NCBI GenBank assembly: GCA_904063045.1
Contig: CAJFCJ010000001.1
Span: forward strand, 2,542,001 to 2,606,000
Source: Dimorphilus gyrociliatus
Lineage: Eukaryota > Animalia > Annelida
DNA length: 64,000 bases
Direction: 5' to 3'
This document shows positions 9,581 through 28,970 of this stretch, piece after piece (position 1 is the stretch's first letter; each line of letters opens with the position of its first letter). The notes beneath the pieces were generated by a model. The model saw nothing but the letters and a program-made list of their open reading frames with translations, was not told where the DNA came from and did not search any database. The position numbers and the translations under genes were made by a program.

Positions 9581-10750
9581 ATGAGTAAACTGAAGGAAAT
9601 GGAAATTAAATTTAACAATGAAATTCTTAAAAGATACTATTCAAATGAATTGAAAAAGATATGGCCTAATCAAAAGTATCAGCAATTAGTTAAAGATTTA
9701 CTGGCAGCTGCTTCTAAGAGAGGAACGAAAACCAAATACGAAAATTATCTAATAACCAATTTTCGCTTGCGGACAGATAGTGGAAAGTGTTATCTTATTG
9801 ATAATAAGAAAGCAAATTCAAGATACGTTTCTTTGGAAGAGCTTTTTCTTATTTTAAATTCTACTCATAAAAACACTAAACATGGTGGAAAGACTAAAAT
9901 GATGTCCGAGTTATCCGCCTACTCAAACATTACGCCGTCCATTATTGATGTCTATATCAATTTTTGTGAAACGTGCTTAGAAGAAAGAAATGAAAAAGAA
10001 CCTACCGAAAATCGACCATCAACAAGTAAAAGAGAACGGGAATTTCATAAAAGAGCCGAACTGGATATAGTTGATATAAAACATTATTCAAAATATGGAT
10101 TTAAATATGTTCTTTGTTATGTTGATAACTATTCGAAATTTTCTCTTCTAAGACCGTTGAGAGATGAAAAGAAACAACTTATCTCTGAGCTGGAGAACGT
10201 TATGAGTAGTTTTGGAACACCTAAAATTTTACAACTAAACAATTCATGTAAATGCAGTATAGATGATATTTTACAGTTCAGCCAAGGATATTTTAAATTC
10301 AGTATTGTAATGGAGAATTCAGACAATTCAGAAAATACTAATGATTGTGAACGAATTAACACAGATTGGAAAGCGATACTCGAGGAAAAGGATAAAAAAG
10401 ATAATCAAACGGATTGGGAAATGTTTATACACTCTATTCAATATGAAATAAACACTAAAATTATTCGAAGAGATTGCAAAACCGCTTTCGAATTGTTTAT
10501 GGGACGTAAACCAAATTGGGGACTTTCTAGCATAGAAGGAATCCCTAAAGATGTTTTAAAAACTATTGAAACGGAAGAAGAATTAGTTGAAAATATGGCC
10601 AAATTTAAAATTAATCCTTCTATTATCTATCCTACTGGAACATCGCGATGCTTTTGTTTAACAGATTGTAAAGATGACAAATGCTTATGCAATATCAACT
10701 GTATTGAATGTACCGAAGACTGTCACGAAGGTTCTTCCTGTTTCAACTAA
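9581..10750 (+). CDS. KRBA2/SCAND3-like (Ginger2/Tdd-type) integrase-domain protein, intronless, probably domesticated or inactive
   Basis: 389-aa ORF: YVSLEELF..THKNTKHGGKTKM...YSNIT...CETC (HHCC zinc finger), RAELDIVD, YVDNYSKFSLLRPL, FGTPKILQLNN (typically QSDNG), CERIN, FELFMGRKP, and a C-terminal Cys-rich CFCLTDCKDDKCLCNINCIECTEDCH tail typical of this family. No RT, RNase H or TIR seen. Confidence 0.8.
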   Translation: MSKLKEMEIKFNNEILKRYYSNELKKIWPNQKYQQLVKDLLAAASKRGTKTKYENYLITNFRLRTDSGKCYLIDNKKANSRYVSLEELFLILNSTHKNTKHGGKTKMMSELSAYSNITPSIIDVYINFCETCLEERNEKEPTENRPSTSKREREFHKRAELDIVDIKHYSKYGFKYVLCYVDNYSKFSLLRPLRDEKKQLISELENVMSSFGTPKILQLNNSCKCSIDDILQFSQGYFKFSIVMENSDNSENTNDCERINTDWKAILEEKDKKDNQTDWEMFIHSIQYEINTKIIRRDCKTAFELFMGRKPNWGLSSIEGIPKDVLKTIETEEELVENMAKFKINPSIIYPTGTSRCFCLTDCKDDKCLCNINCIECTEDCHEGSSCFN

Positions 10751-10938: not shown

Positions 10939-12455
10939 CTATAGAAGTAAGTCTATTTCATGCAATACCAAATTGGAACTGGAAAAGATTCTAGCATCGA
11001 GTATTGTTCTCGCTGAAGGTCTTTCACTTTCCGTAATACTAGTCATATGGATGAGATTTGTAGAGATTTCTGAATCGGAAGGTAGTTTTTCCTGCGATTC
11101 TTGTTCATTAGTTTGTAGATTAAATAACTGCAAACCAATTACTCCTAAACCATAAATGTCACTTGAAAAGCTATAATTATTTAGCTTGGCTTCTGGAGCT
11201 CTGTAAATACTATTAACAAGATTCTTATCTTTCTCTTCGGCTTCTATGCCCATATCAAAATTTCCCATTTTCACGAGTAAGTCGTTCGAATTGTTCATAA
11301 CAAATATATTGCTCGGTTGGACGTCTTTATGCATAATCTTTTTATCATGAAGATAATCCAAAGCTGATAAGAGCATAAGCATAATTCTCTTTTCAAATTC
11401 AAAATATTCAAAATTAGATGAAGGGATACGAGATTCAATCCAATCGGATAAGGTTCCTGTACAATATTCCATTTGAATATACATATTTAAAGTGGAAAGA
11501 TGATTTAATCTCTCTAATCTCCCCTTTTCTTCATTAGACGAAAACCAATTAACTCCATCAGCTCTTTTCTCAATTTCAAACCATTTATCATAATATTTAA
11601 CGAGATTTTGATGTTTACACTGAATCAACTGATTGATTTTCTTCTATTAAAATTAATAACATCTGTTGTTGTTTTTTGAAAAAACAAAAATATCTACTAA
11701 TCTCTTACCTGACGAATACTAATTTCGTTGAATTCTTTAAAGATAATCCTTTCAAGTTTTATATTATAAACAGTATTACTTGACTTTTCCTTAGCCTATT
11801 TCAACAAGAACGTATACATCATTTTGAAAAGGTAAAACATTTAAAAGATAAATACTTTAAAACTAGTTTTGTATTGCCTTTCAACTTGAAAGTTTAACTT
11901 GAAGAAATCTTGTTGAATAGGAATATCTGCAGTATATTCTGTTAATGCTATTCCGTAGATTCTCTCCACAATATCCTTTGAAAGTTTTATCTTATCAACT
12001 GCTTTATCCGATATATTAATTTTTGGGTGATCATCTATTAAAAAATGACTTGAATTACCTTTGTTTTTTTAAATAAAATAATGATTTTAATAAGTAAAAA
12101 AATTACTATCTAATCTATAAAATTCAATATTTGCAATATCTGTCAAAGCTTTTGCCGCTGCATCTCCTTTTGCAGTTATCTCATCAATACCGTATCCCTG
12201 CATTGGTGATATTTTAATATAAAAATATCAAAAAAATTGATATATATATGATATAGTTACAATATATTTTTTATTGAAAATTGTTAATGTAACTGTTCCG
12301 CCCGAACTGCTTTTTGGACGCTGTTCAAATTTACCATAAATAACATTTTTATCAATTTCATTCAATATTAACGATGGATGAATTTTATTGGCAAAATTTT
12401 CATTTATATCCAAATTACAGTTTGGTAGACCTGTTTTTACGTTTTCTAGTGACAT
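10939..12455 (-). CDS. K1: dsRBM + eIF2-alpha-kinase-like pseudokinase
   Basis: Exon 1 HPSLILNEIDKNVIYG...VTLTIFNKKYI spliced to GYGIDEITAKGDAAAKAL (degenerate dsRBM). Kinase exon 10939-11628 has HQNLVKYYDKWFE, MYIQMEYC, HKDVQPSN, and GNFDMG in place of DFG. No GxGxxG loop in the spliced N-lobe exons. Confidence 0.8.
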
Positions 12456-14420: not shown

Positions 14421-16355
14421 ATGGAAGTAATCGAAGTTATTAAGCCTAAGAGGCCAAAAATGTATAGCGGGCCTGATGGAGCGCTGGTGAAGAAAATGTC
14501 ATACACTCTTTCAACTATTAAACGACAAATGAAAAAACAAGTATATACCATTGGTTATCTAAAGAAAAGATTATATTGGAGTGAGAAAGTATTAGACGTT
14601 ATACGAGAAAATTTAGACGAAGCGTCAATGTCGTTTATGCGTTGGCTGGAACTGAAATCAGACTGCGTAGATATGATTGAAAAAGCGGAGAATGGATTAT
14701 ATGTGGGCAGAAGAGACAAACCCTTCGGCACTGATGTAAGCGATGATATTACGCGTGACGACGTGATTATAGATACTAATAGAATAAGGCATGAGAGGGA
14801 TATTGCTTGTTACGAGGTCATGAAAACGACAGAAAATCAAAATTATTTTTCAAATTTGAACGAGCAATTGACGAGGAAAAGAAAAGCAAGGACTACTCCG
14901 ACCGAGATATCAGCAGCAACTAGTTCCGGTTTACGAAACAGACCGTTAATTTCAAATGAACGAAGACTCAGTTTATATAGGCAGCAGACTCAAAGGCCAA
15001 GTTTTGAAGGTAATCTTCAAAACTGTGAGATATTTGTAGATGGTATTAGAGTGGGCGATAGACAAAATACATCAATCGAAATTAAACGAGAAATAATCGA
15101 TAACAGTCCAATAAAGAATTTTTCAGACATTAATATTCGTCAACAGACATCTATTTACAACAACGATATGGCAAGGTTACAAAAATCATTCGGAGAGACA
15201 GCCAAAGAGAAAACGGGAGAGAGTTTTTTAACATCGAAGCCCGTAGATAATGAAATCGAGCAGCTGGTTAGTAAACATTTGAGAAATCTAACAAAGGAAT
15301 TTGAAAGTAAAACGACAAAGATGTGGCAAACTGTGGAAGAAAGAATAACTAGCAAAATTGTTGATAAGTTGGACGGAATGGAAAAGAAATTGGATAGTAA
15401 TTGCAAAGTCATGAGGGCTGTTCAGGAACTTCATTTCGATGATATTAGTAAACGAGTTGAGTCGACAGAAAGTAAACTTGAAAAGCTTGAATACCAATCC
15501 AAAGTTAACAAGTCAATAAGTAATAAAGCGAGCACATCCAACGAAGATAAACAGATAAACAGAGAGGAACGAATCAAGTACATTGAAAGTGTTAAGCCTA
15601 TATTTAATGGAGAATTTGGATCGTTTGATAAATTTCAGACTCAATTTCAGAATATTGTCAGAAAATATAATTTTAGCAATCAAGAGAAATTACAATTATT
15701 AATAGCATCAGTTGGAGATAGTGTAAAGCCCTTATTAGATAAGTATAAGGAGGATGTAAATCATGGATATAAAAAAGCCATCCTGACATTGAAGCAAAAA
15801 TTTACGTCGTTTGACGAAGAGAACTGTAAAAAATTGATGGCGGTTGGCTCAGTCAAAAATGGTGACACTGATAGTTTGGACCGTTTGGCAGATGTTCTTT
15901 GTTCCATCCAGCAGGAATATCTGCGTGAGGGAAACTATAGTAAAGAACGCTTGAAGGGACTGGTCAATATGGTTACGCTATCGCAAATGGACCATTCTTT
16001 AAACAAGAAGTGGACACAAGCTGTCGTCAAATATAACGACCCGTCATTATCGAACTTTTTACACTTTGTGTACAGAGAAGCGACCCAAGCGCGGAAACAG
16101 GAAAATACTCCTAAACCATCTTTACTTGAATCGGCAACCAAGTGTTACTATTGCCAGAAAACGCATCTGCTGAGCAATTGTCAAGACTTTTTGAAACAGC
16201 CAGAAAGAGAGAGGCTAGCTTTCGTTGTACAGGAAGACCTATGTAAAAACTGCCTGAGTAAGCTACACGATACGGTAAATTGTTTAATAGGTCCCTGTTA
16301 CAAGTGTAAAGAGATGCTGAACTCAGCAATACACTCTTGTGGGATTCATAATTGA
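14421..16355 (+). CDS. BEL/Pao-type Gag-like protein (DUF1759-like core + zinc knuckles), solo ORF without pol
   Basis: 644-aa intronless ORF with a coiled-coil middle, PIFNGEFGSFDKFQTQF...EKLQLL...YKKAILTLKQKF (BEL gag core) and knuckles CYYCQKTHLLSNC, CKNCLSKLHDTVNC and a degenerate CYKCKEMLNSAIH. The stop follows immediately; no protease, RT or LTR downstream. Confidence 0.8.
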   Translation: MEVIEVIKPKRPKMYSGPDGALVKKMSYTLSTIKRQMKKQVYTIGYLKKRLYWSEKVLDVIRENLDEASMSFMRWLELKSDCVDMIEKAENGLYVGRRDKPFGTDVSDDITRDDVIIDTNRIRHERDIACYEVMKTTENQNYFSNLNEQLTRKRKARTTPTEISAATSSGLRNRPLISNERRLSLYRQQTQRPSFEGNLQNCEIFVDGIRVGDRQNTSIEIKREIIDNSPIKNFSDINIRQQTSIYNNDMARLQKSFGETAKEKTGESFLTSKPVDNEIEQLVSKHLRNLTKEFESKTTKMWQTVEERITSKIVDKLDGMEKKLDSNCKVMRAVQELHFDDISKRVESTESKLEKLEYQSKVNKSISNKASTSNEDKQINREERIKYIESVKPIFNGEFGSFDKFQTQFQNIVRKYNFSNQEKLQLLIASVGDSVKPLLDKYKEDVNHGYKKAILTLKQKFTSFDEENCKKLMAVGSVKNGDTDSLDRLADVLCSIQQEYLREGNYSKERLKGLVNMVTLSQMDHSLNKKWTQAVVKYNDPSLSNFLHFVYREATQARKQENTPKPSLLESATKCYYCQKTHLLSNCQDFLKQPERERLAFVVQEDLCKNCLSKLHDTVNCLIGPCYKCKEMLNSAIHSCGIHN

Positions 16356-18382: not shown

Positions 18383-21300
18383 TCAGAACACGATCTTATT
18401 TTCTGCCTCATTAAGAGTAGCTCTTGAAATCTTAAGGCGAAACTCGCGAAACTCCGATACCATATAATGATTAATACTCTTTTTCTCGAAGGGATATGAT
18501 GAATGCCTGCGATGCACCGACACCATACAATGATCAATACACTTTTTCTCGAAGGAATCTAATAGAGACTTCCCTATGCTTTTTAAATCTGTCAAGTCCT
18601 GAAATTTGTCCAAAGATGACATGTAAGGTAGAATAGAAATTTGTCCAATCTTAGCTATCTGTCTGAAGTCGTTTGTAGAAATAAAAATATTAGTTGTTCT
18701 AATATTTCCATGAACTTTAAAGTGCTTGTAGACGTAGTTCAAACCAGAAACTATATCGTCAAAGAGTTCACGCTCTATATCCTCATTTTTTTTGTCCTCT
18801 AGCCAGTTCTCTAAATTTAAACAAATATATTCCATTTGAACGTATATTTGTAATATTGGCTCTTTTGTTCTAGGACTGCTCTCTAGCCATATTTGGAAAT
18901 ATCTCAGCACATTTGAATGTTTAAATTGAAGTAGACTATAAACGTTTTTTATTGTCTGAAAGGAAAAGTGTTGCATTAACATTTTATTAGATTAAATTTA
19001 TATTCTTCATACTTGCAAATAATTACGTTTACTAATGTCTACAAATTTAATTTTCTTAGCGTCTACAATAAAAATCCCTTTGTCCAGATTCTTTTGAACC
19101 TAAAATAGAAGAAAATGAAATTTGAAAACTTAAAAAAGTTCATTTTAAAGAAAATTCAAACCTTTGCAACTAATCTAGTTTTACTTTGATGTACAATTGC
19201 GCTAATTGTGAAACTACCTTTAAAAAAATTTTTTTTAAAAGGCTTGATCTGTTCACTTACAACAAGTTGATTAATCAATGCTTGTTTTTTTTTATCAAGT
19301 TTTGAATTATCAAAGACGGAATCCCAAGGAAATCCTTCCGCCAGACATTCTGAAAAACAATCATTTTTTTTTGACTTAAGACTAAGATTTTTAATTTGTT
19401 AAAGCAATAATTTGTAATATCTTACTCTGAAAATTTCTATAAGAAAACTCATAAAGATTTTGAAGGAGTTCACTAGCAAAGATTCTCTTTTCTTTTCGAG
19501 TCTTTCCCACGACCTATATGTCAATGATTTGTTATATATTTACATTGAGATATTTAAAAGCAACCTTAATTATGTAGATTGGACCGTTAATAGTTACCTC
19601 CTGATATGCGTTTCTATGATTCTTTGAAAATTTTAAAGACTTGGAGCAGACTGAAAGAATACTGCATGGATGAACACTTTTCCTATTGAACGAATACGGC
19701 AATTCTGATTTAGTATTTATACTATCTTCTTCGATTGTTTTAAGGTTTAATGATGGAGATTTCTTAACAAGCTGATGAGGAGGAATGCGTCTCATCTTAG
19801 AATCAGGTAAAGTCATAATTTTGACGTAATAAGAAAATAAAGTGAATTCATCAGGCTGGAGATCATTGCTATGTAGTAATAAACCATTATTAGTATTGTT
19901 TAATCTTTCTATAAAATCCTGAAGAGTTTTACACTTGCTAAGCATTAGTTGAAATACTCTTCCAAGGCTATAAATATCAGATGGATAAGAATATGTTGAC
20001 CCTTTTGCCTCTGGCGCTCGGAATATTAGTGTTCCAATATTAGATGTAAATTTAGTATCTTCAGTTTGAACATCGTGAATTAATCTTGATAGTCCAAAAT
20101 CGCCTACCTTAGCCATGAACTTGTTATTCTCTTTTATCACCAAAATATTTGAAGGTTTGATGTCTCTGTGTAATACCTCCTGCGAATGCATATATTCAAG
20201 AGCGGATAATAAGTTGTGCATCATATCTATTTCTGTAGAAAAGTCATAAATGGTCCCAATTTTACGAATGCTAAACAACCAATGTTCTAGATTCGCCAAA
20301 CATAGTTCGGTTTGAATATAAGCGTACAGGCGGGGAAGACGACTCAACCTTTTGTTCATTTCGATTTCTTTCAATGATTTACTCGAATTGACACTTGACG
20401 AGTAGAATGATAGACAATTCTTATCTTGTTCTTCAATTTCAACCCACGACGTGTAATATCTAACAATATTAGGATGATGAAGTTTAGCTAGCACAGACAT
20501 TTCTCTGAAAGACTAATAATTGATCCATATTATAAATTTCCTTACAAATTCACTTAAAATACCGTTTTTAGTACTGTAGAATCTAATGTCTGAAGTGCTA
20601 TTTCCTGCTTTTTTATAGCAAAATATTGACGGTTATTCTTGCTGGCCTAAAATAAATAATTTAATAAATAATTATAAAGATTCTATTAAAAAGATTAACT
20701 TTATAAACAACTCCAAATCCTCCTTTTCCAAGAATTTCTTTTTCTATATTTCTCTTTTTAGTATAGTCAAAATCTATTGTATGAGAGTGTGTTTGTTTCA
20801 TATCGTTTTTAATTAATTGTTTTAAGAAGTAAGTGTACAACTTCGCTTTACATTTCCATTCAACCACTATATTATCAACATTTTGGCTATTCAAAAAAAA
20901 CCAAAACTTCTTCTTACCTAAATGAAACAAAGTAAGAATTTATAATTGGTTGTAATAATAAAGTGTTACTTTTTCTTCTTAGAAGAATGCTAAAACATTT
21001 TTCCAAAGCTTTTACAGCTGCTTTCAATTTTCTTTTTTTCTTACTGGCCGTCTAGAGGTTGAAATTTACAAATTTATTTCTATTAATGCATAATAATTCA
21101 ATAATTTGTTGCCTTTATGAATGTGCCATCGATGAGTAATTCGTAATCAGATAATTCCATATTATACATTATTTTTTCGTTGAATAATTCCTTATTACAT
21201 GATCTTATGATTGTAATCATTTCTAGAGGTGATACCACAATTTTCAAGTCGCCGTCACCCTGTGGCCGTAAGTCAACATAGCCATGATTTACGTCTTGTC

Positions 21301-22473: not shown

Positions 22474-24328
22474 ATGGCTTCTGCAAGTTCACAGAATTAT
22501 ACGTCACTTTTAAACGAACTTTTTCCGGGTCAAATCCAGGTGAAATTTCTTTTTCTCTTGTATTCTATTGAATATTATAGTCTTTTTTTTATTTTACAGT
22601 ATACGGAAGTTAAAAGTGGTCCAGACCACGATCCTACATATAAAATTTCGCTAAAGTTACGAGGAAAATCGTTTCAAGGAATTGCAACAAATAAAAAAAC
22701 AGCTAGAAAGTTATGTGCTGAACAAGCTTATAATCACTTTAAAAGCAATAGTATTAACGAAGAGAGAAGGGATTATCAATTATCTGAAGATGTCCTAAAT
22801 CCATCAGTAATTCTAAATAAAGTTACTAAAGGTACTAGATACAGTTTAGTCGAACAAAATGGTAATAATTCTACAGTGGACGTTTCAGTAGAGGGAGCTG
22901 TGTATCGGGTATTAATTAAAGCATAATTCAAATAATGCTTTAAAGCCGTTATTTAATATATAAATTAAAATTTTAAAGGGTACAGGTAGCGACGAAGCAA
23001 TGGCTAGAGCAGATGCAGCAGCTCGAGCTCTGACAACTCGATTTCAAATTGAATTTGATAGGGAAAATAATAGTATTATTTGACGGAACACATTTTAAAA
23101 ACTATTTTAATATATTTTCTTTATTTAAAATGTAGATCAAATCCCTAAAATTGCCTTAGCAAGTATAAAAAAACTATCTGGTAAAGTAGCCCCAAAAGTA
23201 CTTGAAGAAATTTACCAGAAAAGTTTAGAAGAGTACAATAAAGATATTTCTATCGATACTGGACATTTCAAGAGACATTTTTTTGATGAAACAGAACTTG
23301 GTTCGGGATCTTTTGGATCTGTTTCAAAGGTTTTAAATAATTTTCATCGTTAAAGGTGTATAACATATGTTTCATTATTTCTTTAAAGGTAAAAAGTCGT
23401 ACAGATTCACAATTCTACGCAGTCAAGAGGGTTACTTTGCTACCTTTGAAAAAAGAAGAAATTATGAAGGTATCACATTTGTTTCTTGCTTTATACTTTC
23501 CTCATTCACTTCCCTTTTTAGACGTCAAGAGAAGTTATCCACCTATCCGTCTTGAATCATTCAAACATTATTAGATACAATCGAGCTTGGTTTGAAATTG
23601 GATACATACCAACAGGTCCAGATCATATACCCTGTTTGCACCTGTATATTCAAACAGAATTATGCAATCATGATTTATCATATTGGATCAAAAACAGAAA
23701 AAATCATCCTGAAATTATTAACAATAACACTGATGAAGTGAAAATCATGCACGATGTTTTGTCAGCATTGAGTTATCTTTGTAAACAAAAAGTTATTCAT
23801 CGAGATATCAAACCTCAAAATATATTTATTATCGAAAGGTCAGATTCGAATGAACTAGTTGTAAAATTGGGCGATTTTGGTTTATCTAGAGTTAAAGATT
23901 CGATGGCGAAGCTCACTGGTGGTATTGGAACGCCTTTTTACTTTGCTCCAGAGGTATTAACTGGCGACTACAGCTACCCAAGTGATATTTTTAGCTTTGG
24001 TTTAGTAACTCTCGAATTATTTGGACTTCACAAAAGCTCTGACGAATTACGATTAGATGTTGGTGCACTTAGAAATGAAAATACACCGCCAGCTCAACTT
24101 AACCATAAATATCCCCAAATATACGACATCGTTAAGAAAATGACAAAAACCTCACCAACAGAAAGACCCACTGCAGACGAATTACTTAACATGGGTCTTT
24201 TTGAAAACTATTCATCGAGGAGTTATCAAGATTTGGTAAAAGAAAATGAGCAATTAAAGGCTACTGTATTTCAACAGAATAAAAGAATAGAAGAGTTACA
24301 GATGATAATCGATTCTCTTCGTACTTGA
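22474..24328 (+). CDS. K3: 2x dsRBM + eIF2-alpha-type kinase + C-terminal coiled coil (PKR-like architecture)
   Basis: dsRBM1 SLLNELFPGQIQ|YTEVKSGPDHDPTY...GIATNKKTARKLCAEQAY; dsRBM2 NPSVILNKVTKGTRY...AVYR|GTGSDEAMARADAAARAL; GSGSFG, YAVK, HSNIIRYNRAWFE, LYIQTELC, HRDIKPQN, DFG, GTPFYFAPE; heptad tail LVKENEQLKATVFQQNKRIEELQMII. Canonical GT-AG introns of about 55-70 bp. Confidence 0.9.
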
Positions 24329-24947
24329 TATTGAAGAATACAGCTAGACATCTCCTCTGGAATGATATTGCCTAAACTCTCTTCGATCTTTTAATACTGT
24401 TATTTAGTGCATTAATACATAATAAACTAATAAACAGTTTTACTTGAAAACACCATAAAATCTTTACTTTTCATTTATTGGATATTTAATATTCACAAAA
24501 TCTTTACAATCGTCATTTTTATGAATATTAATATGGTAGTATGTATGTATATTTTATACATATACGATGACATTACTCGCTATTTAAACTGGAGAACAAG
24601 ATCACTTTAGGGCAGGTAGTTGATTCACTAGCTGATATGAGTAATAAGTTATATCTAAAGCCAAATATTTAGAATTCGAAAGTAACTTGGCAAAAACCAG
24701 AAATCTATATAAAGTACGACTAGAGCAACCTAAAGGAGGTCTCTTACTATACTATTTATATGAGCAGACGAACTTAGTTGCTATTTTGACTCATTCAGAA
24801 GAGTTCTTAATTTAAAACACCATTAATTAACTTAAATCTTAAAGGTAAGAATTATGATTTATTTGATGGTACATTCTTACTTACGATCGTCGTTTAATGT
24901 CAAGGATATTTTTTAAACTATGACTTTCAATTTCAGTATTTACATTC

Positions 24948-26567
24948 ATGGAGCCTGAGAATATAGATTATATCTCACTTTTAAACAGGAAATTCGGCAA
25001 ACACGTTAAAGTATGTAAAAAATAATCATAACAAAGTAATTCTATATTCATCAATGTAAATAGTACGTGGATGTTGAAAGCGACGACGATGGTAAACCTA
25101 TATCCGATTTTACAAAGAAAATTCTCATCCCGACTAAAAAAGGTGAAATATCATTCACGGCAATCGGTCGAAGTAAAAAGATAGCTAAGCAAGCTGTTGC
25201 GAAAAAGGCATATCACTCACTTTTTGAAACAAATTTCTTTTCTGAATCTAAAAAAGAAAGATGTCAAGTATATATTCAAGTTTAATAAAATATTTAAATA
25301 GATATAAGAACATTATTTCTTCTTATCTAGGATAAAAAGGAGGAGAAAATTGAAGAAGAAGAAGAAAAAGAAGAAGAAGAAGAAGAAAAGGATAATAGGA
25401 AACAAACGTCTTTTTCGGAGAAGCTAGATTATCAACTAAACTCTCCTATCTTAGACAATTATTATGAAAAAGTGTTCTCCGAAGAAAAGTTTATAGGTGA
25501 AGGAGGATTTGGCGAAGTTAAAAAGGTTGGTATCCTTAATAAATTATTAAAAAGAGTTCTATATTAATTATTATAGGCAAAACACAAAATAAACGAGCAA
25601 TGGTACGCAATAAAAGAAATAAAAGTGACGGATAGCAGCCCTGAAAGTATAGATAAGGTAATTCTCATTAAAAAATTCATATATTTTTAAAAGCTTAATA
25701 TATGTTTCTAATGAATAGAATAGAAGAGAAATATTATTATTATCAAACTGCTCACATCCAAATATTGTAAGATATTACGGTAGTTGGTACGAAACTCGTC
25801 AACACGAAACTTCATCATTCCCAAGTAATAGTAGTAACAATTTTAGTATATTTATACAAATGGAGTTATGTGATGGTAATTTGGAAGACTGGATATATGA
25901 TAAATCAACAAAATTGCTTTGTTTTAAGAGAAAAGTTATTCACGATATGTTATCAGCCGTCCATTATATTCATTCTTTAGAGATTATTCATAGAGATATA
26001 AAACCATGCAATATTTTAACTAATAAACAAAATGAGACAATTGAAGTGAAACTAGGGGACTTTGGTGTAGCAAGAACGATTGGGAAAAGGCACACAAGTA
26101 ATGTTGGTACACTGGGCTACACTGCTCCTGAAATAGATACTTGTGACTACGCTACTTCCGTTGATATATATAGCTTAGGGATTGTTGCTCTAGAGGTGTT
26201 TGGAAACTTCAAAACCAAAGCAGAGTTCTATCACTGTGGTAACTTGTTTAAGAAAACAGGAGAATTTCCGTCAATGTTATTAGAAAACCAAGTAATATGT
26301 GAAACTATCAAGAAAATGACTGATTCAAAAAATAGGCCAACAGCAGAGGAACTCCTAAATTCTGATGTATTTTCTGAAAGCAGGAATGACGATGTCGTGA
26401 GATTAATAAATAAAATCCAACTACAAGATCAAATAATACAAGATTTACGGCAATTAGCATCAGATAAAGATAAAAGATTAGAAGAATCAAAGAAATTGTT
26501 AGATATACAAAAACAACAAATTGAAGAAATGGAGAAATTATTTCAAATTAAACATTCTAATAAATGA
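24948..26567 (+). CDS. K4: 1x dsRBM + poly-Glu linker + eIF2-alpha-type kinase + C-terminal coiled coil
   Basis: MEPENIDYISLLNRKFGKHVK|YVD...AIGRSKKIAKQAVAKKAY; EEEEEKEEEEEEK; GEGGFG, YAIK, HPNIVRYYGSWYE, FIQMELC, HRDIKPCN, DFG, HTSNVGTLGYTAPE; long heptad tail. Confidence 0.9.
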
Positions 26568-26998
26568 CCTATTTATAGATAATTAATTAATATGTTAATT
26601 AATAAATATAAATTTTTTTATTTTGGATAATGAATTACATTATAGGATTAATTTAAGAATTTAAGTTTGTTTGACTCTTTAATAACAATTAGTCGTCTAA
26701 TATAAACATTCAATTATAAAATATTCAATAATATTTCGTTTTGCAAAAAGCTTCTAAATGAATATTTATCTTTTTGATAATAATAATATTATAGGCCTAA
26801 TATATCCTTATCAACCGCATTCATTTATTCCAGAATTTGCCTCCATCAAAATGATTAGTTATGAATCTACCGTGAATATTGAGAGTATGAATTATCTTAC
26901 TTTTATGAACACATCATTCAATTCATTTTTATTTTATTGTCTCTTTTTTCAATTGAAGAATAAAATAGCACAAAGTTAATTATTAAGAATAAGATGAA

Positions 26999-28970
26999 CT
27001 ACTTTTGAAAAGGGTTTTCCAAGATATTTGAAGCTTTTAATCGATATTTGGCTAATTCAAATTTCAGGTTGTGAATTTCCTCATTTTTCAATTCGATCGT
27101 TTTGTTTAACTGTCGAATTTCTTCATAACATTGCGACAGCGTAAATTGGTTGGCTGATTCAACGTCTTCAAATAGAAATCTACTGTTAAGTAATGTAGCA
27201 GCAGTAGGTCTTCGACTTGGATCGCTATCTGTCATCTCTTTAATTGTGTCAGATAAATATAGAGATTTAGACGTTAAATCATACGGTAAATTTCTATTCT
27301 TTGTTAAATCTCTGACGGCTTCGGCGAACTTTTCAGTTGAATCAGCAATATCTGAAAATAACTCCAACGTGACTATACCAAGGCTATATATATCGCTTGA
27401 AAAATTGTAGCTAAAAGAGTAAATTTCGGGAGCAGCGTAAAAGATGGTTCCAACTCCACCGGTTAGATTTGCAGCGGAAGAGCAAGGATTATTCACTTCC
27501 CTTGCCAAACCAAAATCACTTAATTTAATCACCATGTTACCTAGTTCATCAGCAATTAAGATGTTAGAAGGTTTAATGTCTCTATGAATAACACGTTCAT
27601 TATGAAGATAGTTTAGAGCCTTCAATATATCTCTTAACATAATCTTCTCCATCGAATAAGAGTAACTGTTTGTAACTTTTCTTCTTGACAGCCATTTCTG
27701 TAGATTTTCTACACACAACTCGGTTTGCAAATACATATTGAGACAAGGAATGTCATCAACAGTTGAATATTCTATAGCATTTGAAGTTGGATTTTCAATT
27801 TCAAACCAAGATGTATAATATCTAACAATATTTCGATGTTGATATCTAGCCAATTCAATTATTTCTCTACTTTTCTGTTAAAGTTAATACTTACTGTTTT
27901 TAATTGTTTAGAATAATTAAAAAAAAAAAGTCTACTTTACCTTCTTTAGTTTATTTTCCATTAATTCAGAAAATCGAATTTTTACCTTTTTTACGGCGTA
28001 GACTGTTCGTTCAAGTTTGTTTTCAACCTAATTTAGTAACTTGAATATATATTTAACAAGAATTGATGAAAGAGTAAGCATTACCTCATAAACTTCTCCG
28101 TAGCATCCTGAACCTATTGATTTATTTATATTAAACTCCTTTTTAAATCTTAGTTCTCTAGCATTTAAATCCTTTGTATACTCTTTGACAATGAACTTGA
28201 ATACTTGAAGTTTTTCTTTTGGAGGCAATGTTACTTCATCCAGAGCATTGCCAGATAAAACTACCTTTGGTTGGCCATCTTTTTGTTCAAGAATCAACAA
28301 TTAAATGATTTTTCATAAATTTTCAATTTGGCAATAGATAAAACCTGTTTGATATTGGAATCTAAAATTCCATAGAGTTTCCATAGTCTCAACAATTGCT
28401 CGAATTTTGGCTACTTGTTGTTTTGGGCCGAATCCCTATGAAACAATATATACTGTATTTGTAAACATTGACAGTGAATAAAAAGGAGAAAAGTCTTTCT
28501 CTCACCTCAAAAATTTGATCGTCGATACTAAGAGTAACTCTAACATTCTCATCAATATTTAATCGACCAATACCTGTCTCGTAAGCAATATTTTTATTAA
28601 TTTCATTTAATATTGAAGGGAGAGGAATTGAGATGCTAGATTCTTCATATCTTTGAAAAATATCAGGCCTCCGATTGTAATCTGCTAAAGCCATAGCTGC
28701 GCACAATTTTTGAGCATCTCTTTTGTTTTTTCCCTTCGCCTCGTATGATATACGATTTATAGTAACTTTACAAGTATATATTGGCGAATGATCCGGCCCA
28801 TCTCGATCAATAAATTCAAACTATTAAAGCTTTTATTAATTAACTTTTCCAGAAAACATCAACAATCAACAAACCTGTCTACAATGTGGAAAAGTGTCGT
28901 TGAATTTAGACATAGTATCGGGAGTAATTACCACATCGGATTCATTTGTGTCTGTTGATGACATCATCAT
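26999..28970 (-). CDS. K5: 2x dsRBM + eIF2-alpha-type kinase + C-terminal coiled coil
   Basis: PHCRQ|FEFIDRDGPDHSPIYTCKV...GKNKKDAQKLCAAMAL; PSILNEINKNIAY...QIFE|GFGPKQQVAKIRAI; GSGCYG, YAVKK, HRNIVRYYTSWFE, YLQTELC, HRDIKPSN, DFG, GTIFYAAPE; heptad tail IRQLNKTIELKNEEIHNLKFEL. Confidence 0.9.

What the first reader, a model, noticed from the sequence alone, without database searches (positions are those of the whole stretch)
23552..27853. The kinase domains look HRI-derived (EIF2AK1), not PKR-derived
Compared with human sequences recalled from memory: (i) K3-K5 end in RPTAxxLLxxxxF followed by a heptad coiled coil, as in HRI (RPSAIQLLQSELF...LQMKIIEQEKEIAELKKQL), whereas PKR has no such tail. 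(ii) All five have C-x3-L-x2-W after the hinge (LCNHDLSYW, LCDGNLEDW, LCVENLQKW), the HRI spacing; PKR and PERK have C-x4-L. (iii) The K4 activation loop HTSNVGT resembles HRI HTSRVGT, and DIYSLGIVALEVF resembles HRI DMYSLGVVLLELF. The large HRI heme-binding kinase insert is reduced. This suggests an HRI duplicate replaced its sensor with dsRBMs and kept the dimerising coiled coil.
Basis: partly seen in the sequence, partly recalled or inferred. Interest (0 to 1): 0.8.

Follow-up and report, generated by a model that had tools for sequence, protein, structure and literature searches.

The report
Worm dsRNA-sensor kinases descend from HRI
In the tiny annelid Dimorphilus gyrociliatus, a cluster of genes that join dsRNA-binding motifs to an eIF2-alpha kinase (the build of the vertebrate antiviral sensor PKR) most likely arose from the stress kinase HRI rather than from PKR, so a PKR-like architecture seems to have evolved twice.

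Summary

**What it is.** The window is Dimorphilus gyrociliatus (annelid). K5 is the public protein DgyrCDS664. K3, K4 and K5 are expressed or annotated dsRBM + eIF2-alpha-kinase genes.

**Discrete characters shared with HRI:**
- The C-x3-L hinge spacing occurs in 11/11 K-family kinase domains and 71/71 HRIs. PKR (141/145) and PERK (3/3) have C-x4-L.
- A heptad tail follows directly after the kinase domain. It matches an HRI-tail profile better than shuffled or reversed controls, and AlphaFold2 models it as one 49-residue helix. PKR and PERK have no such tail.
- Two N-lobe introns sit at the same site and phase as in annelid, mollusc and fish HRI. PKR of two species differs.

**Trees.** With 46 clear eIF2-alpha kinases, HRI + K is a clade (97/95). 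Forcing K with PKR or PERK gives p-AU 0.024 and 0.019. Forcing K with GCN2 or PKR+PERK gives about 0.08. With 71 rows the backbone is unresolved, but the best tree still joins K to HRI.

**Weak points.** PERK and GCN2 are thinly sampled, branches are long, and similarity to solved structures does not discriminate.

Function (dsRNA sensing, eIF2-alpha phosphorylation, dimerisation) is inferred only.

Earlier scan notes on neighbouring DNA raised the same idea.

The parts
22474..24328 (+). K3 gene: dsRBM exons plus eIF2-alpha-kinase exons, with its own stop at 24326-24328
   Evidence: Exon map of DgyrCDS663 on the window. Pfam dsrm and Pkinase. An RNA-derived contig spans 22623-24442 with GT..AG joints and reads through the stop.
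23522..24328 (+). K3 last exon: helix C to the C-terminus (HRD 23798-23821, DFG 23873-23881, activation loop LTGGIGTPFYFAPE 23912-23953)
   Evidence: Pkinase 3.5e-33.
23663..23686 (+). K3 hinge motif CNHDLSYW (C-x3-L-x2-W, the HRI-type spacing)
24203..24325 (+). K3 C-terminal heptad tail (41 residues)
   Evidence: Heptad scan. Scores 14.5 bits against the HRI-tail HMM, versus a shuffle mean of 2.0 and 1.7 when reversed.
23330..23388 (+). K3 intron A (after the G-loop, ..VSK|V, phase 0)
   Evidence: RNA joint skipping 59 nt. Same site in HRI of Dimorphilus, Lottia and Polyodon.
23470..23521 (+). K3 intron B (two residues before REV of helix C, phase 0)
   Evidence: RNA joint skipping 52 nt. Same site in the three HRIs.
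24949..26567 (+). K4 gene: own ATG, a weak dsRBM match (below Pfam's cut-off), acidic linker, kinase
   Evidence: RNA joints at 24842/24935 and 25010/25064. Sub-threshold dsrm match (20.7 bits against a 23-bit cut-off, E 0.00063) plus Pkinase.
25719..26567 (+). K4 last exon (hinge CDGNLEDW 25869-25892; activation loop HTSNVGTLGYTAPE 26091-26132)
26373..26564 (+). K4 C-terminal heptad tail (64 residues)
   Evidence: Scores 10.6 bits against the HRI-tail HMM, versus a shuffle mean of -1.0.
25526..25576 (+). K4 intron A
   Evidence: RNA joint skipping 51 nt.
25658..25718 (+). K4 intron B
   Evidence: RNA joint skipping 61 nt.
26999..28967 (-). K5 gene = DgyrCDS664 (CAD5111348.1, 551 aa): two dsRBM-type exons plus kinase
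   Evidence: Precomputed Pfam dsrm + Pkinase.
26999..27874 (-). K5 last exon (hinge CVENLQKW 27692-27715; HRD 27563-27586; activation loop 27425-27466)
   Evidence: AlphaFold2 kinase fold, mean pLDDT 86.5.
27002..27169 (-). K5 C-terminal heptad tail (56 residues)
   Evidence: Modelled as one helix of about 49 residues. Scores 23.2 bits against the HRI-tail HMM, versus a shuffle mean of 1.7 and 2.9 when reversed.
28028..28084 (-). K5 intron A
27875..27940 (-). K5 intron B
19427..20512 (-). K2 large kinase exon; hinge CLANLEHW is also C-x3-L; introns A and B at the same sites
10939..11628 (-). K1 kinase exon; hinge CTGTLSDW is also C-x3-L; degenerate catalytic motifs and no heptad tail

Best explanation
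K3, K4 and K5, together with their paralogues K1, K2, DgyrCDS653 and relatives in another worm, are eIF2-alpha kinases. Their kinase domain plus C-terminal coiled coil most likely descend from the HRI (EIF2AK1) lineage, not from vertebrate PKR.

Proposed history (inferred):
- An HRI copy lost the N-terminal haem-sensing helical domain and most of the kinase insert.
- It gained N-terminal dsRBMs by exon shuffling.
- It kept the HRI tail.
- It then multiplied in tandem.

Likely mechanism (inferred, not shown):
- The coiled coil holds the protein as a dimer, as proposed for HRI.
- The dsRBMs bind dsRNA.
- Binding relieves autoinhibition or clusters dimers, which allows trans-autophosphorylation of the two conserved activation-loop threonines.
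- The active kinase phosphorylates eIF2-alpha Ser51 and shuts down translation.

This would make it a PKR analogue reached by convergence.

Shown here: sequence features, gene structure, expression of K3 and K4, and phylogenetic placement.
For: **Identity.** K5 is 100% identical to DgyrCDS664 of Dimorphilus gyrociliatus.

**Family.** Pfam finds dsrm and Pkinase. The best solved-structure matches are the four eIF2-alpha kinases.

**Named hits.** In the 303-964 aa range, the top named hits after the paralogues are nearly all EIF2AK1 proteins carrying Pfam HRI2_3H.

**Trees.**
- 46 rows: HRI + K 97/95, K family 100/99, PKR + PERK 98/82.
- AU on that set: K+PKR -27.7 lnL, p 0.024. K+PERK -28.7, p 0.019.
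- 71 rows: K + all HRI held together is 1.8 lnL better than the free tree. K + Dimorphilus HRI alone is -5.0, p 0.41.

**Discrete characters.**
- Hinge C-x3-L in 71/71 HRI and 11/11 K domains, against C-x4-L in PKR and PERK.
- YAAPE in 76/78 HRI and 6/11 K domains, against YM[AS]PE in 138/145 PKR domains.
- Tail: HRI median 49 aa with heptad score 0.6, K 67 aa with 0.5, PKR 11 aa with 0, PERK 0.09.
- K tails score 7-38 bits against an HMM of 68 HRI tails. For most, 0-1 of 200 shuffles reach them and the reversed sequence scores low (exceptions under evidence against).

**Introns.** Introns A and B have identical site and phase in K2-K5 and in HRI of Dimorphilus, Lottia and Polyodon. PKR of Lacerta and Xenopus lacks intron A, and its intron near helix C has a different offset or phase.

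**Other points.**
- Dimorphilus HRI and the K genes alone lack all C-lobe introns.
- The species has its own HRI, which scores 180 bits to human HRI against 152 to PERK.
- K3 and K4 are transcribed, and K3 ends at its own stop.
- The tail is modelled as one long helix.
Against: - In the 71-row tree the backbone is unresolved and HRI itself is not one clade.
- In that set K+PKR is not rejected (p 0.141), nor is K+PERK (p 0.086).
- In the 46-row set K+GCN2 (p 0.084) and K+PKR+PERK (p 0.082) are not rejected.
- The 46-row set was chosen after seeing the first tree.
- PERK is represented by only 2-4 rows and GCN2 by 2 fungal rows. No PKR-sis sequence and no Dimorphilus PERK or GCN2 could be included.
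- K and HRI rows both have long branches, so attraction between them is possible.
- Similarity to solved structures does not favour HRI. K5 scores GCN2 97.8, PERK 94.4, HRI 80.5, PKR 72.4 bits. The K-family profile scores PERK 223, HRI 217.5, GCN2 217, PKR 210.
- The K proteins have no HRI2_3H domain, and their insert is as short as that of PKR.
- The hinge deletion also appears in a few non-HRI kinases, so it can arise more than once.
- In the tail test, one shuffle of the K3 tail beat the real score (17.0 against 14.5 bits), and the reversed controls were not low for Ku2 (5.1 against 6.9) or P0164 (10.9 against 14.3).
- Intron positions in PERK and GCN2 were not examined.
- No biochemical evidence exists for any function.
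Confidence: 0.75

Rival explanations
1. The K family is an old, separate eIF2-alpha-kinase lineage, for example sister to PKR+PERK or to GCN2. On this view it is neither HRI-derived nor PKR-orthologous. The hinge deletion, the heptad tail and YAAPE would then be convergent or ancestral features.
For: The backbone is unresolved in the 71-row tree. K+PKR+PERK has p-AU 0.082 and K+GCN2 0.084. Scores against solved structures do not discriminate. The hinge deletion recurs in a few unrelated kinases. Fungal GCN2 also has YAAPE.
Against: The best trees in both data sets join K with HRI. Three independent discrete characters agree: the indel, the tail with directional sequence similarity, and two intron sites with phase.
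Confidence: 0.16
2. The K genes are orthologues of vertebrate PKR. On this view an ancient dsRBM-kinase was present in the bilaterian ancestor and lost in most invertebrates.
For: They share the domain order (N-terminal dsRBMs, C-terminal eIF2-alpha kinase) and a short kinase insert like that of PKR. K+PKR is not rejected in the 71-row set (p 0.141).
Against: - The PKR clade excludes K at 99/95.
- K+PKR has p 0.024 in the cleaner set.
- PKR has C-x4-L, YM[AS]PE, an 11-aa tail without heptads, no intron A, and a differently placed intron near helix C.
- A survey of 154 metazoans found PKR-group proteins only in jawed vertebrates (PMC11305385).
Confidence: 0.04
3. The K kinase domains derive from PERK (EIF2AK3), having lost the luminal and transmembrane parts.
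For: PERK is the top or near-top solved-structure hit for K3, K5 and the K-family profile. The H-T-x-x-V-G-T activation loop is shared with PERK.
Against: The PERK clade (98/94 and 100/96) excludes K, and PERK groups with PKR. K+PERK has p 0.019 and 0.086. PERK has C-x4-L, YMSPE and no heptad tail.
Confidence: 0.04

Closest known systems
HRI / EIF2AK1 (haem-regulated eIF2-alpha kinase), including the species' own copy DgyrCDS6497
   Same: - Clade HRI + K in the best trees.
- One-residue hinge deletion (C-x3-L).
- YAAPE motif.
- Coiled-coil tail directly after RP[ST]A..LL...F, with directional sequence similarity.
- Two N-lobe introns at the same site and phase.
- Like Dimorphilus HRI, no introns in the C-lobe.
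   Different: - No HRI2_3H / haem-sensing N-terminal domain; dsRBMs sit there instead.
- The kinase insert is cut to about 30-50 residues, against a median of 180.
- The genes form a tandem array with pseudokinase members.
- The sequences are much more divergent than HRI orthologues.
PKR / EIF2AK2 of jawed vertebrates (and PKZ)
   Same: - Architecture: N-terminal dsRBMs, linker, eIF2-alpha kinase domain.
- Short kinase insert.
- Both activation-loop threonines conserved.
- Lineage-specific tandem duplication is also known for fish and amphibian PKR.
   Different: - A separate clade.
- C-x4-L hinge and YM[AS]PE.
- No coiled-coil tail.
- Different intron pattern.
- PKR dimerises through dsRNA binding and its kinase N-lobe rather than through a C-terminal coiled coil (established knowledge of PKR).
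Pomacea canaliculata 'EIF2AK1-like isoform X2' (P0308)
   Same: An HRI-like kinase (C-x3-L, YAAPE) fused to a dsRBM in another lophotrochozoan.
   Different: The dsRBM is C-terminal and takes the place of the coiled coil. This protein groups with a Littorina HRI-like protein, not with the K family. It is probably a separate fusion.

Membership tests
eIF2-alpha kinase (PEK) family | Intact protein-kinase catalytic motifs (VAIK Lys, helix-C Glu, HRD, DFG, APE) | tested here: met
   K3, K4 and K5 carry YAVK/YAIK, REV/REI, HRDIKP, DFG and APE. Pkinase E-values range from 1e-29 to 1e-37.
eIF2-alpha kinase (PEK) family | Closest relatives are HRI, PKR, PERK and GCN2; insert between beta4 and beta5; two activation-loop threonines | tested here: met
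   The top solved-structure hits are the four eIF2-alpha kinases. An insert of 28-51 residues is present. T-x4-T is conserved in LTGGIGT, HTSNVGT and LTGGVGT.
eIF2-alpha kinase (PEK) family | Phosphorylates eIF2-alpha on Ser51 | not testable with these tools
   Needs an enzyme assay or a yeast growth-inhibition assay.
HRI / EIF2AK1 | Kinase domain groups with HRI in phylogeny | tested here: met
   97/95 for HRI + K in the 46-row tree. Best tree in the 71-row set. Not every alternative is rejected at 5%.
HRI / EIF2AK1 | N-terminal haem-sensing helical domain (Pfam HRI2_3H, PF22949) | tested here: not met
   K5 and DgyrCDS663 carry dsrm instead. Dimorphilus' own HRI also gives no HRI2_3H hit.
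HRI / EIF2AK1 | Large kinase insert | tested here: not met
   28-51 residues, against an HRI median of 180.
HRI / EIF2AK1 | C-terminal coiled coil after the kinase domain | tested here: met
   The human HRI coiled coil at 586-630 is described in PMC13181343.
HRI / EIF2AK1 | Hinge spacing C-x3-L-x2-W (one residue shorter than in other eIF2-alpha kinases) | tested here: met
PKR / EIF2AK2 | N-terminal dsRBMs joined to an eIF2-alpha kinase domain | tested here: met
   Pfam dsrm passes its cut-off in the K3 exon, and dsrm is on record for K5 (DgyrCDS664). The K4 exon match is sub-threshold (20.7 bits against 23). The K5 dsRBM exon scanned alone gave no hit.
PKR / EIF2AK2 | Kinase domain inside or sister to the jawed-vertebrate PKR clade | tested here: not met
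   The PKR clade at 99/95 excludes K. AU for K+PKR gives p 0.024, but p 0.141 in the wider set.
PKR / EIF2AK2 | Activation by dsRNA | not testable with these tools
   Needs binding and activation assays.

The most novel reading that the evidence does not exclude
An annelid built its own dsRNA-sensing eIF2-alpha kinases from HRI, independently of jawed-vertebrate PKR, and expanded them into a fast-evolving tandem array with decoy-like pseudokinases. Because the HRI coiled coil is kept, these sensors would be constitutive dimers. Activation would then work by relief of inhibition or by clustering on dsRNA, not by dsRNA-induced dimerisation as in PKR. A second, differently built HRI-like + dsRBM fusion in a snail hints that HRI is a recurrent scaffold for such sensors in Lophotrochozoa.
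Probability: 0.5. Interest if true: 0.75.

Novelty: new variant of a known kind. Interest (0 to 1): 0.66.

Why it matters
PKR is treated in the literature as an invention of jawed vertebrates (PMC11305385, PMC5025754, PMC5851622). A dsRBM + eIF2-alpha kinase family in an annelid, built on an HRI scaffold, would be a clean case of convergent assembly of an antiviral-type nucleic-acid sensor.

It would show that translational shut-off by dsRNA sensing may exist in invertebrates alongside RNAi. It would also give a natural experiment on how sensor domains can be swapped on eIF2-alpha kinases, and on whether a pre-formed coiled-coil dimer changes the logic of activation. It is directly testable in yeast or in vitro.

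Tried and rejected
- **First word search.** K5's last exon alone could only see proteins of 156-497 aa. It found no close kin and was uninformative.
- **Protein atlas look-up**. It returned only generic kinase clusters.
- **Big HMMER search**. Its top list was dominated by multi-kinase-domain proteins whose scores add up. It did yield the public K proteins and the Logan relatives.
- **Guessing PERK by length**. This failed: those proteins were fish PKRs, an ankyrin kinase and oomycete kinases. PERK was finally recognised in the tree and confirmed against solved structures (P0328 scores 319 bits to PERK).
- **Similarity to solved human and mouse kinases**, with a single sequence or a profile. 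It does not discriminate among the four subfamilies, so I dropped it as evidence.
- **FastTree of all 317 domains**. It placed K outside HRI+GCN2+PKR with weak support. I judged it unreliable because of long branches and replaced it with curated LG+C20 trees.
- **Joining exons.** For whole kinase domains I used the public models DgyrCDS664, 663, 656 and 653 returned by the tools. K1 and the pseudokinase unit were left out of the trees because they are partial and degenerate.
- **Missing gene records.** The X. tropicalis PKR and the Pomacea protein were not on record for gene structure.


Full report
**What the region is**

The window is AT-rich (about 30% G+C) eukaryotic DNA with introns of about 50-65 nt. 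A search of 1.84 billion representative proteins with K5's last exon returned a 551-aa protein that is 100% identical. That protein is DgyrCDS664 (CAD5111348.1) of the annelid Dimorphilus gyrociliatus.

Mapping the public proteins onto the window gave these assignments:
- K5 = DgyrCDS664, 28967-27002 on the minus strand.
- K3 and K4 are merged in the model DgyrCDS663.
- K2, together with a pseudokinase unit, = DgyrCDS656-662.
- DgyrCDS653 (two units) lies outside the window.

Pfam finds Pkinase in every kinase exon. Its dsrm model passes the cut-off in the K3 exon and is on record for K5. The K4 exon match is below the cut-off.

**Check of the observation**

- The last exons of K3, K4 and K5 all begin at the same codon, two residues before R-E-V/I of helix C.
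- They carry HRDIKPxN, DFG and a T-x4-T activation loop.
- They read RPTA..LL....F and then continue with 41, 64 and 56 residues. These tails hold the strongest heptad pattern of each exon.
- An AlphaFold2 model of K5 residues 196-551 has mean pLDDT 86.5 and pTM 0.80. It shows a kinase fold followed by one uninterrupted helix of about 49 residues.
- C-x3-L-x2-W is present in K1 to K5.
- The kinase insert is short, 28-51 residues from NIVRY to the hinge Cys. The HRI median is 180 and the PKR median 36.
H-T-x-x-V/I-G-T is also found in PERK, so it does not mark HRI.

**Expression and gene limits**

The one public run that holds this DNA behaves like a transcriptome, because its contigs skip GT..AG introns.
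- A 1576-nt contig covers K3 from 22623 to 24442. All K3 introns are removed, and the contig reads straight through K3's own stop (24326-24328) into the 3' end.
- Depth then falls, and separate contigs start K4 with their own 5' exons (joints at 24842/24935 and 25010/25064; ATG at 24949).
- K3 therefore really ends in its heptad tail. The merged model DgyrCDS663 is not supported by these contigs.
- Introns A and B of K3 and K4 are confirmed by the joints.

**Relatives**

The word search with DgyrCDS664 (hits of 303-964 aa) listed the Dimorphilus paralogues first. After them came almost only proteins named eIF2-alpha kinase 1. They came from insects, ticks, crustaceans, molluscs, a cnidarian, a tunicate, a fish and fungi. 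Most carry Pfam PF22949, which is 'HRI2_3H, haem-regulated eIF-2-alpha kinase helical domain'.

The species' own HRI is DgyrCDS6497 (P0231). Its best solved-structure match is human HRI at 180 bits, against 152 for PERK.

PKRs of amphibians, reptiles, mammals and fish came from a third search. GCN2 was recognised by its RWD and HisRS-like domains. PERK was recognised in the tree and confirmed (P0328 scores 319 bits to PERK structures).

Five unnamed proteins from Logan assemblies belong to the K family. One of them is 65% identical to DgyrCDS653b. It lies in a tandem kinase array in contigs of runs SRR23372216 and SRR23372228, which come from a related worm.

**Similarity to solved structures is not informative**

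K5, K3 and an 11-sequence K-family profile score about equally against PERK, GCN2, HRI and PKR.

**Trees**

I used kinase domains only. The tail was cut off so that it stays independent evidence. Alignment was by MAFFT E-INS-i, and the trees used LG+C20+F+G4 (PMSF) with ultrafast bootstrap and SH-aLRT support.

With 71 rows (K family 11; HRI and HRI-like 32; PKR 12; PERK 4; GCN2 2; protist kinases and outgroups):
- PKR (99/95), PERK (98/94) and GCN2 (96/89, together with a tapeworm fragment) are clades that exclude the K family.
- The backbone is unresolved, and HRI is not one clade.
- Holding K with all HRI gives a tree 1.8 lnL better than the free search found (p-AU 0.53).
- K with Dimorphilus HRI alone costs 5.0 lnL (p 0.41).
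- K+PKR costs 22.1 lnL (p 0.141).
- K+PERK costs 29.2 lnL (p 0.086).

With 46 rows of clear identity (K 11, metazoan HRI 19, PKR 12, PERK 2, GCN2 2):
- HRI + K is a clade at 97/95.
- The K family is supported at 100/99.
- PKR + PERK is supported at 98/82.

| Constraint (46 rows) | lnL cost | p-AU |
|---|---|---|
| K+PKR | -27.7 | 0.024 |
| K+PERK | -28.7 | 0.019 |
| K+GCN2 | -21.5 | 0.084 |
| K+PKR+PERK | -18.4 | 0.082 |

The sequence phylogeny therefore prefers HRI in both data sets. It does not exclude every alternative at 5%. The smaller set was chosen after the first tree had been seen. K and HRI rows both have long branches.

**Discrete characters that do not depend on the tree**

1. Hinge. 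The spacing between the hinge Cys and the Leu is three residues in 71/71 matched HRI domains, in Dimorphilus HRI and in 11/11 K-family domains. It is four residues in 141/145 PKR domains and 3/3 PERK domains. In the 71-row alignment, GCN2 and most protist eIF2-alpha kinases and outgroup kinases also show the longer form.
2. Y-A-A-P-E. It occurs in 76/78 HRI domains and 6/11 K domains, with the rest reading Y-x-A-P-E. PKR has Y-M-A/S-P-E in 138/145 domains. Fungal GCN2 also has YAAPE, so this character is weaker.
3. Tail.
   - HRI has a median of 49 residues with heptad score 0.6. K has 67 residues with 0.5, PKR 11 residues with none, and PERK a tail without heptads.
   - Against an HMM of 68 HRI tails, scores are K5 23.2, DgyrCDS653a 38.3, K3 14.5 and K4 10.6 bits. 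Composition-matched shuffles average about 1-2 bits, and 0-1 of 200 reach the real score.
   - Reversed tails keep the heptad period, and most score low, so the likeness is more than generic coiled-coil character. There are exceptions: one K3 shuffle scored 17.0, and the reversed control was close to the real score for DgyrCDS653b and for P0164.
4. Introns.
   - K2 to K5 have intron A right after the G-loop (..V-Y/S/K-K/E | V/A, phase 0).
   - They have intron B two residues before R-E-V/I/M (phase 0).
   - HRI of Dimorphilus (L001), Lottia (L005) and Polyodon (L007) has both introns at the same site and phase.
   - PKR of Lacerta (L006) and Xenopus laevis (L008) has no intron A. Its intron before helix C lies six or three residues before K-E-V, with a split codon in Xenopus.
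   - Lottia and Polyodon HRI and both PKRs have several C-lobe introns, for example HRDLK|P. Dimorphilus HRI and the K genes have none.
   - PERK and GCN2 could not be scored for these introns, because the one PERK gene fetched is nearly intron-less.

**Interpretation**

A copy of the HRI gene in the lineage of this worm kept the kinase domain and the coiled-coil tail. It lost the N-terminal haem-sensing region and most of the insert, including the intron that lies in it. It then gained dsRBM exons and multiplied in tandem.

A recent origin from the worm's own HRI is compatible with the data but is not shown. The array exists in at least one related species.

Function is inferred from the parts. 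All catalytic motifs and both activation-loop threonines are intact in K3 to K5. These genes are therefore probably active eIF2-alpha kinases controlled by dsRNA.

HRI is described as an obligate dimer with a likely coiled coil at its C-terminus (PMC13181343). A K protein that keeps that tail would be a pre-formed dimer. dsRNA would then have to act by relieving inhibition or by clustering dimers, not by inducing dimerisation as in PKR. This is a hypothesis, not a result.

**Comparison with what is known**

Published surveys place PKR only in vertebrates (PMC5025754, PMC5851622). One survey of 154 metazoans found dsRBD-bearing eIF2-alpha kinases only in jawed vertebrates (PMC11305385). My paper searches found nothing on such kinases in Dimorphilus or in other invertebrates.

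The K genes are not HRI in the functional sense, because they have no haem-sensing domain and no large insert. They are not PKR by descent either. They are best called HRI-derived, PKR-like kinases.

A snail protein (Pomacea, P0308) joins an HRI-like kinase to a C-terminal dsRBM. It groups elsewhere in the tree, which suggests a second, separate fusion.

**Limits and omissions**

Whole kinase domains came from public protein models returned by the tools. K1 and the pseudokinase unit were left out of the trees.
- Earlier scan notes on DNA just upstream (s1-084503, s1-080346) had raised the same idea. I tested it here independently, and the upstream pair (DgyrCDS653) was included in the trees.

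Noticed in passing
window 24265-25064: The public model DgyrCDS663 splices K3 (from 24265) onto K4 (at 25064) and drops K3's last 21 codons. RNA-derived contigs instead run through K3's stop to 24442, and they start K4 separately (ATG 24949). K3 and K4 therefore look like two genes.
   Followed up: partly
P0308 (Pomacea canaliculata, not in the window): A 422-aa 'EIF2AK1-like isoform X2' has an HRI-like kinase (C-x3-L, YAAPE) followed by a C-terminal dsRBM (Pfam dsrm 1e-8). This is a second, differently arranged dsRBM + HRI-like fusion in Lophotrochozoa. It groups with a Littorina HRI-like protein, not with the K family.
   Followed up: partly
L002:2233-8552 and L003:1106-2260 (Logan contigs of SRR23372216 and SRR23372228): A related worm carries a tandem array of at least four K-like kinase ORFs. 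One is 65% identical to DgyrCDS653b, with an in-frame intron at the intron-B site. In L003 a methyltransferase gene follows, matching an earlier scan note that places one upstream of this window. The species was not identified.
   Followed up: partly
L001:3001-5055 (Dimorphilus HRI, DgyrCDS6497): The worm's own HRI is streamlined. It is 517 aa long, gives no Pfam HRI2_3H hit, has an insert of only about 80 residues, and has no introns in the C-lobe. Its tail ends in N-C-K-C-G. A C-x-C also closes the tail of K-like P0164 (R-C-T-C-S), and cysteines occur in the Hydractinia HRI tail.
   Followed up: partly
P0158 (Halotydeus destructor), P0225 and P0152 (Pristionchus): PERK-clade proteins of a mite and of nematodes carry two kinase domains in one predicted protein.
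   Followed up: no
window 25331-25400: K4 has a strongly acidic Glu/Lys-rich low-complexity linker between its dsRBM exon and the kinase. The reads tool skipped 25345-25398 as a repeat.
   Followed up: no
window 9581-10750 and 14421-16355: Two long intron-less ORFs lie between K1 and the K2 unit. From their translations they look like mobile-element proteins: one integrase-like, one gag-like with a C-x2-C-x4-H-x4-C knuckle. They may have helped rearrange the array.
   Followed up: no
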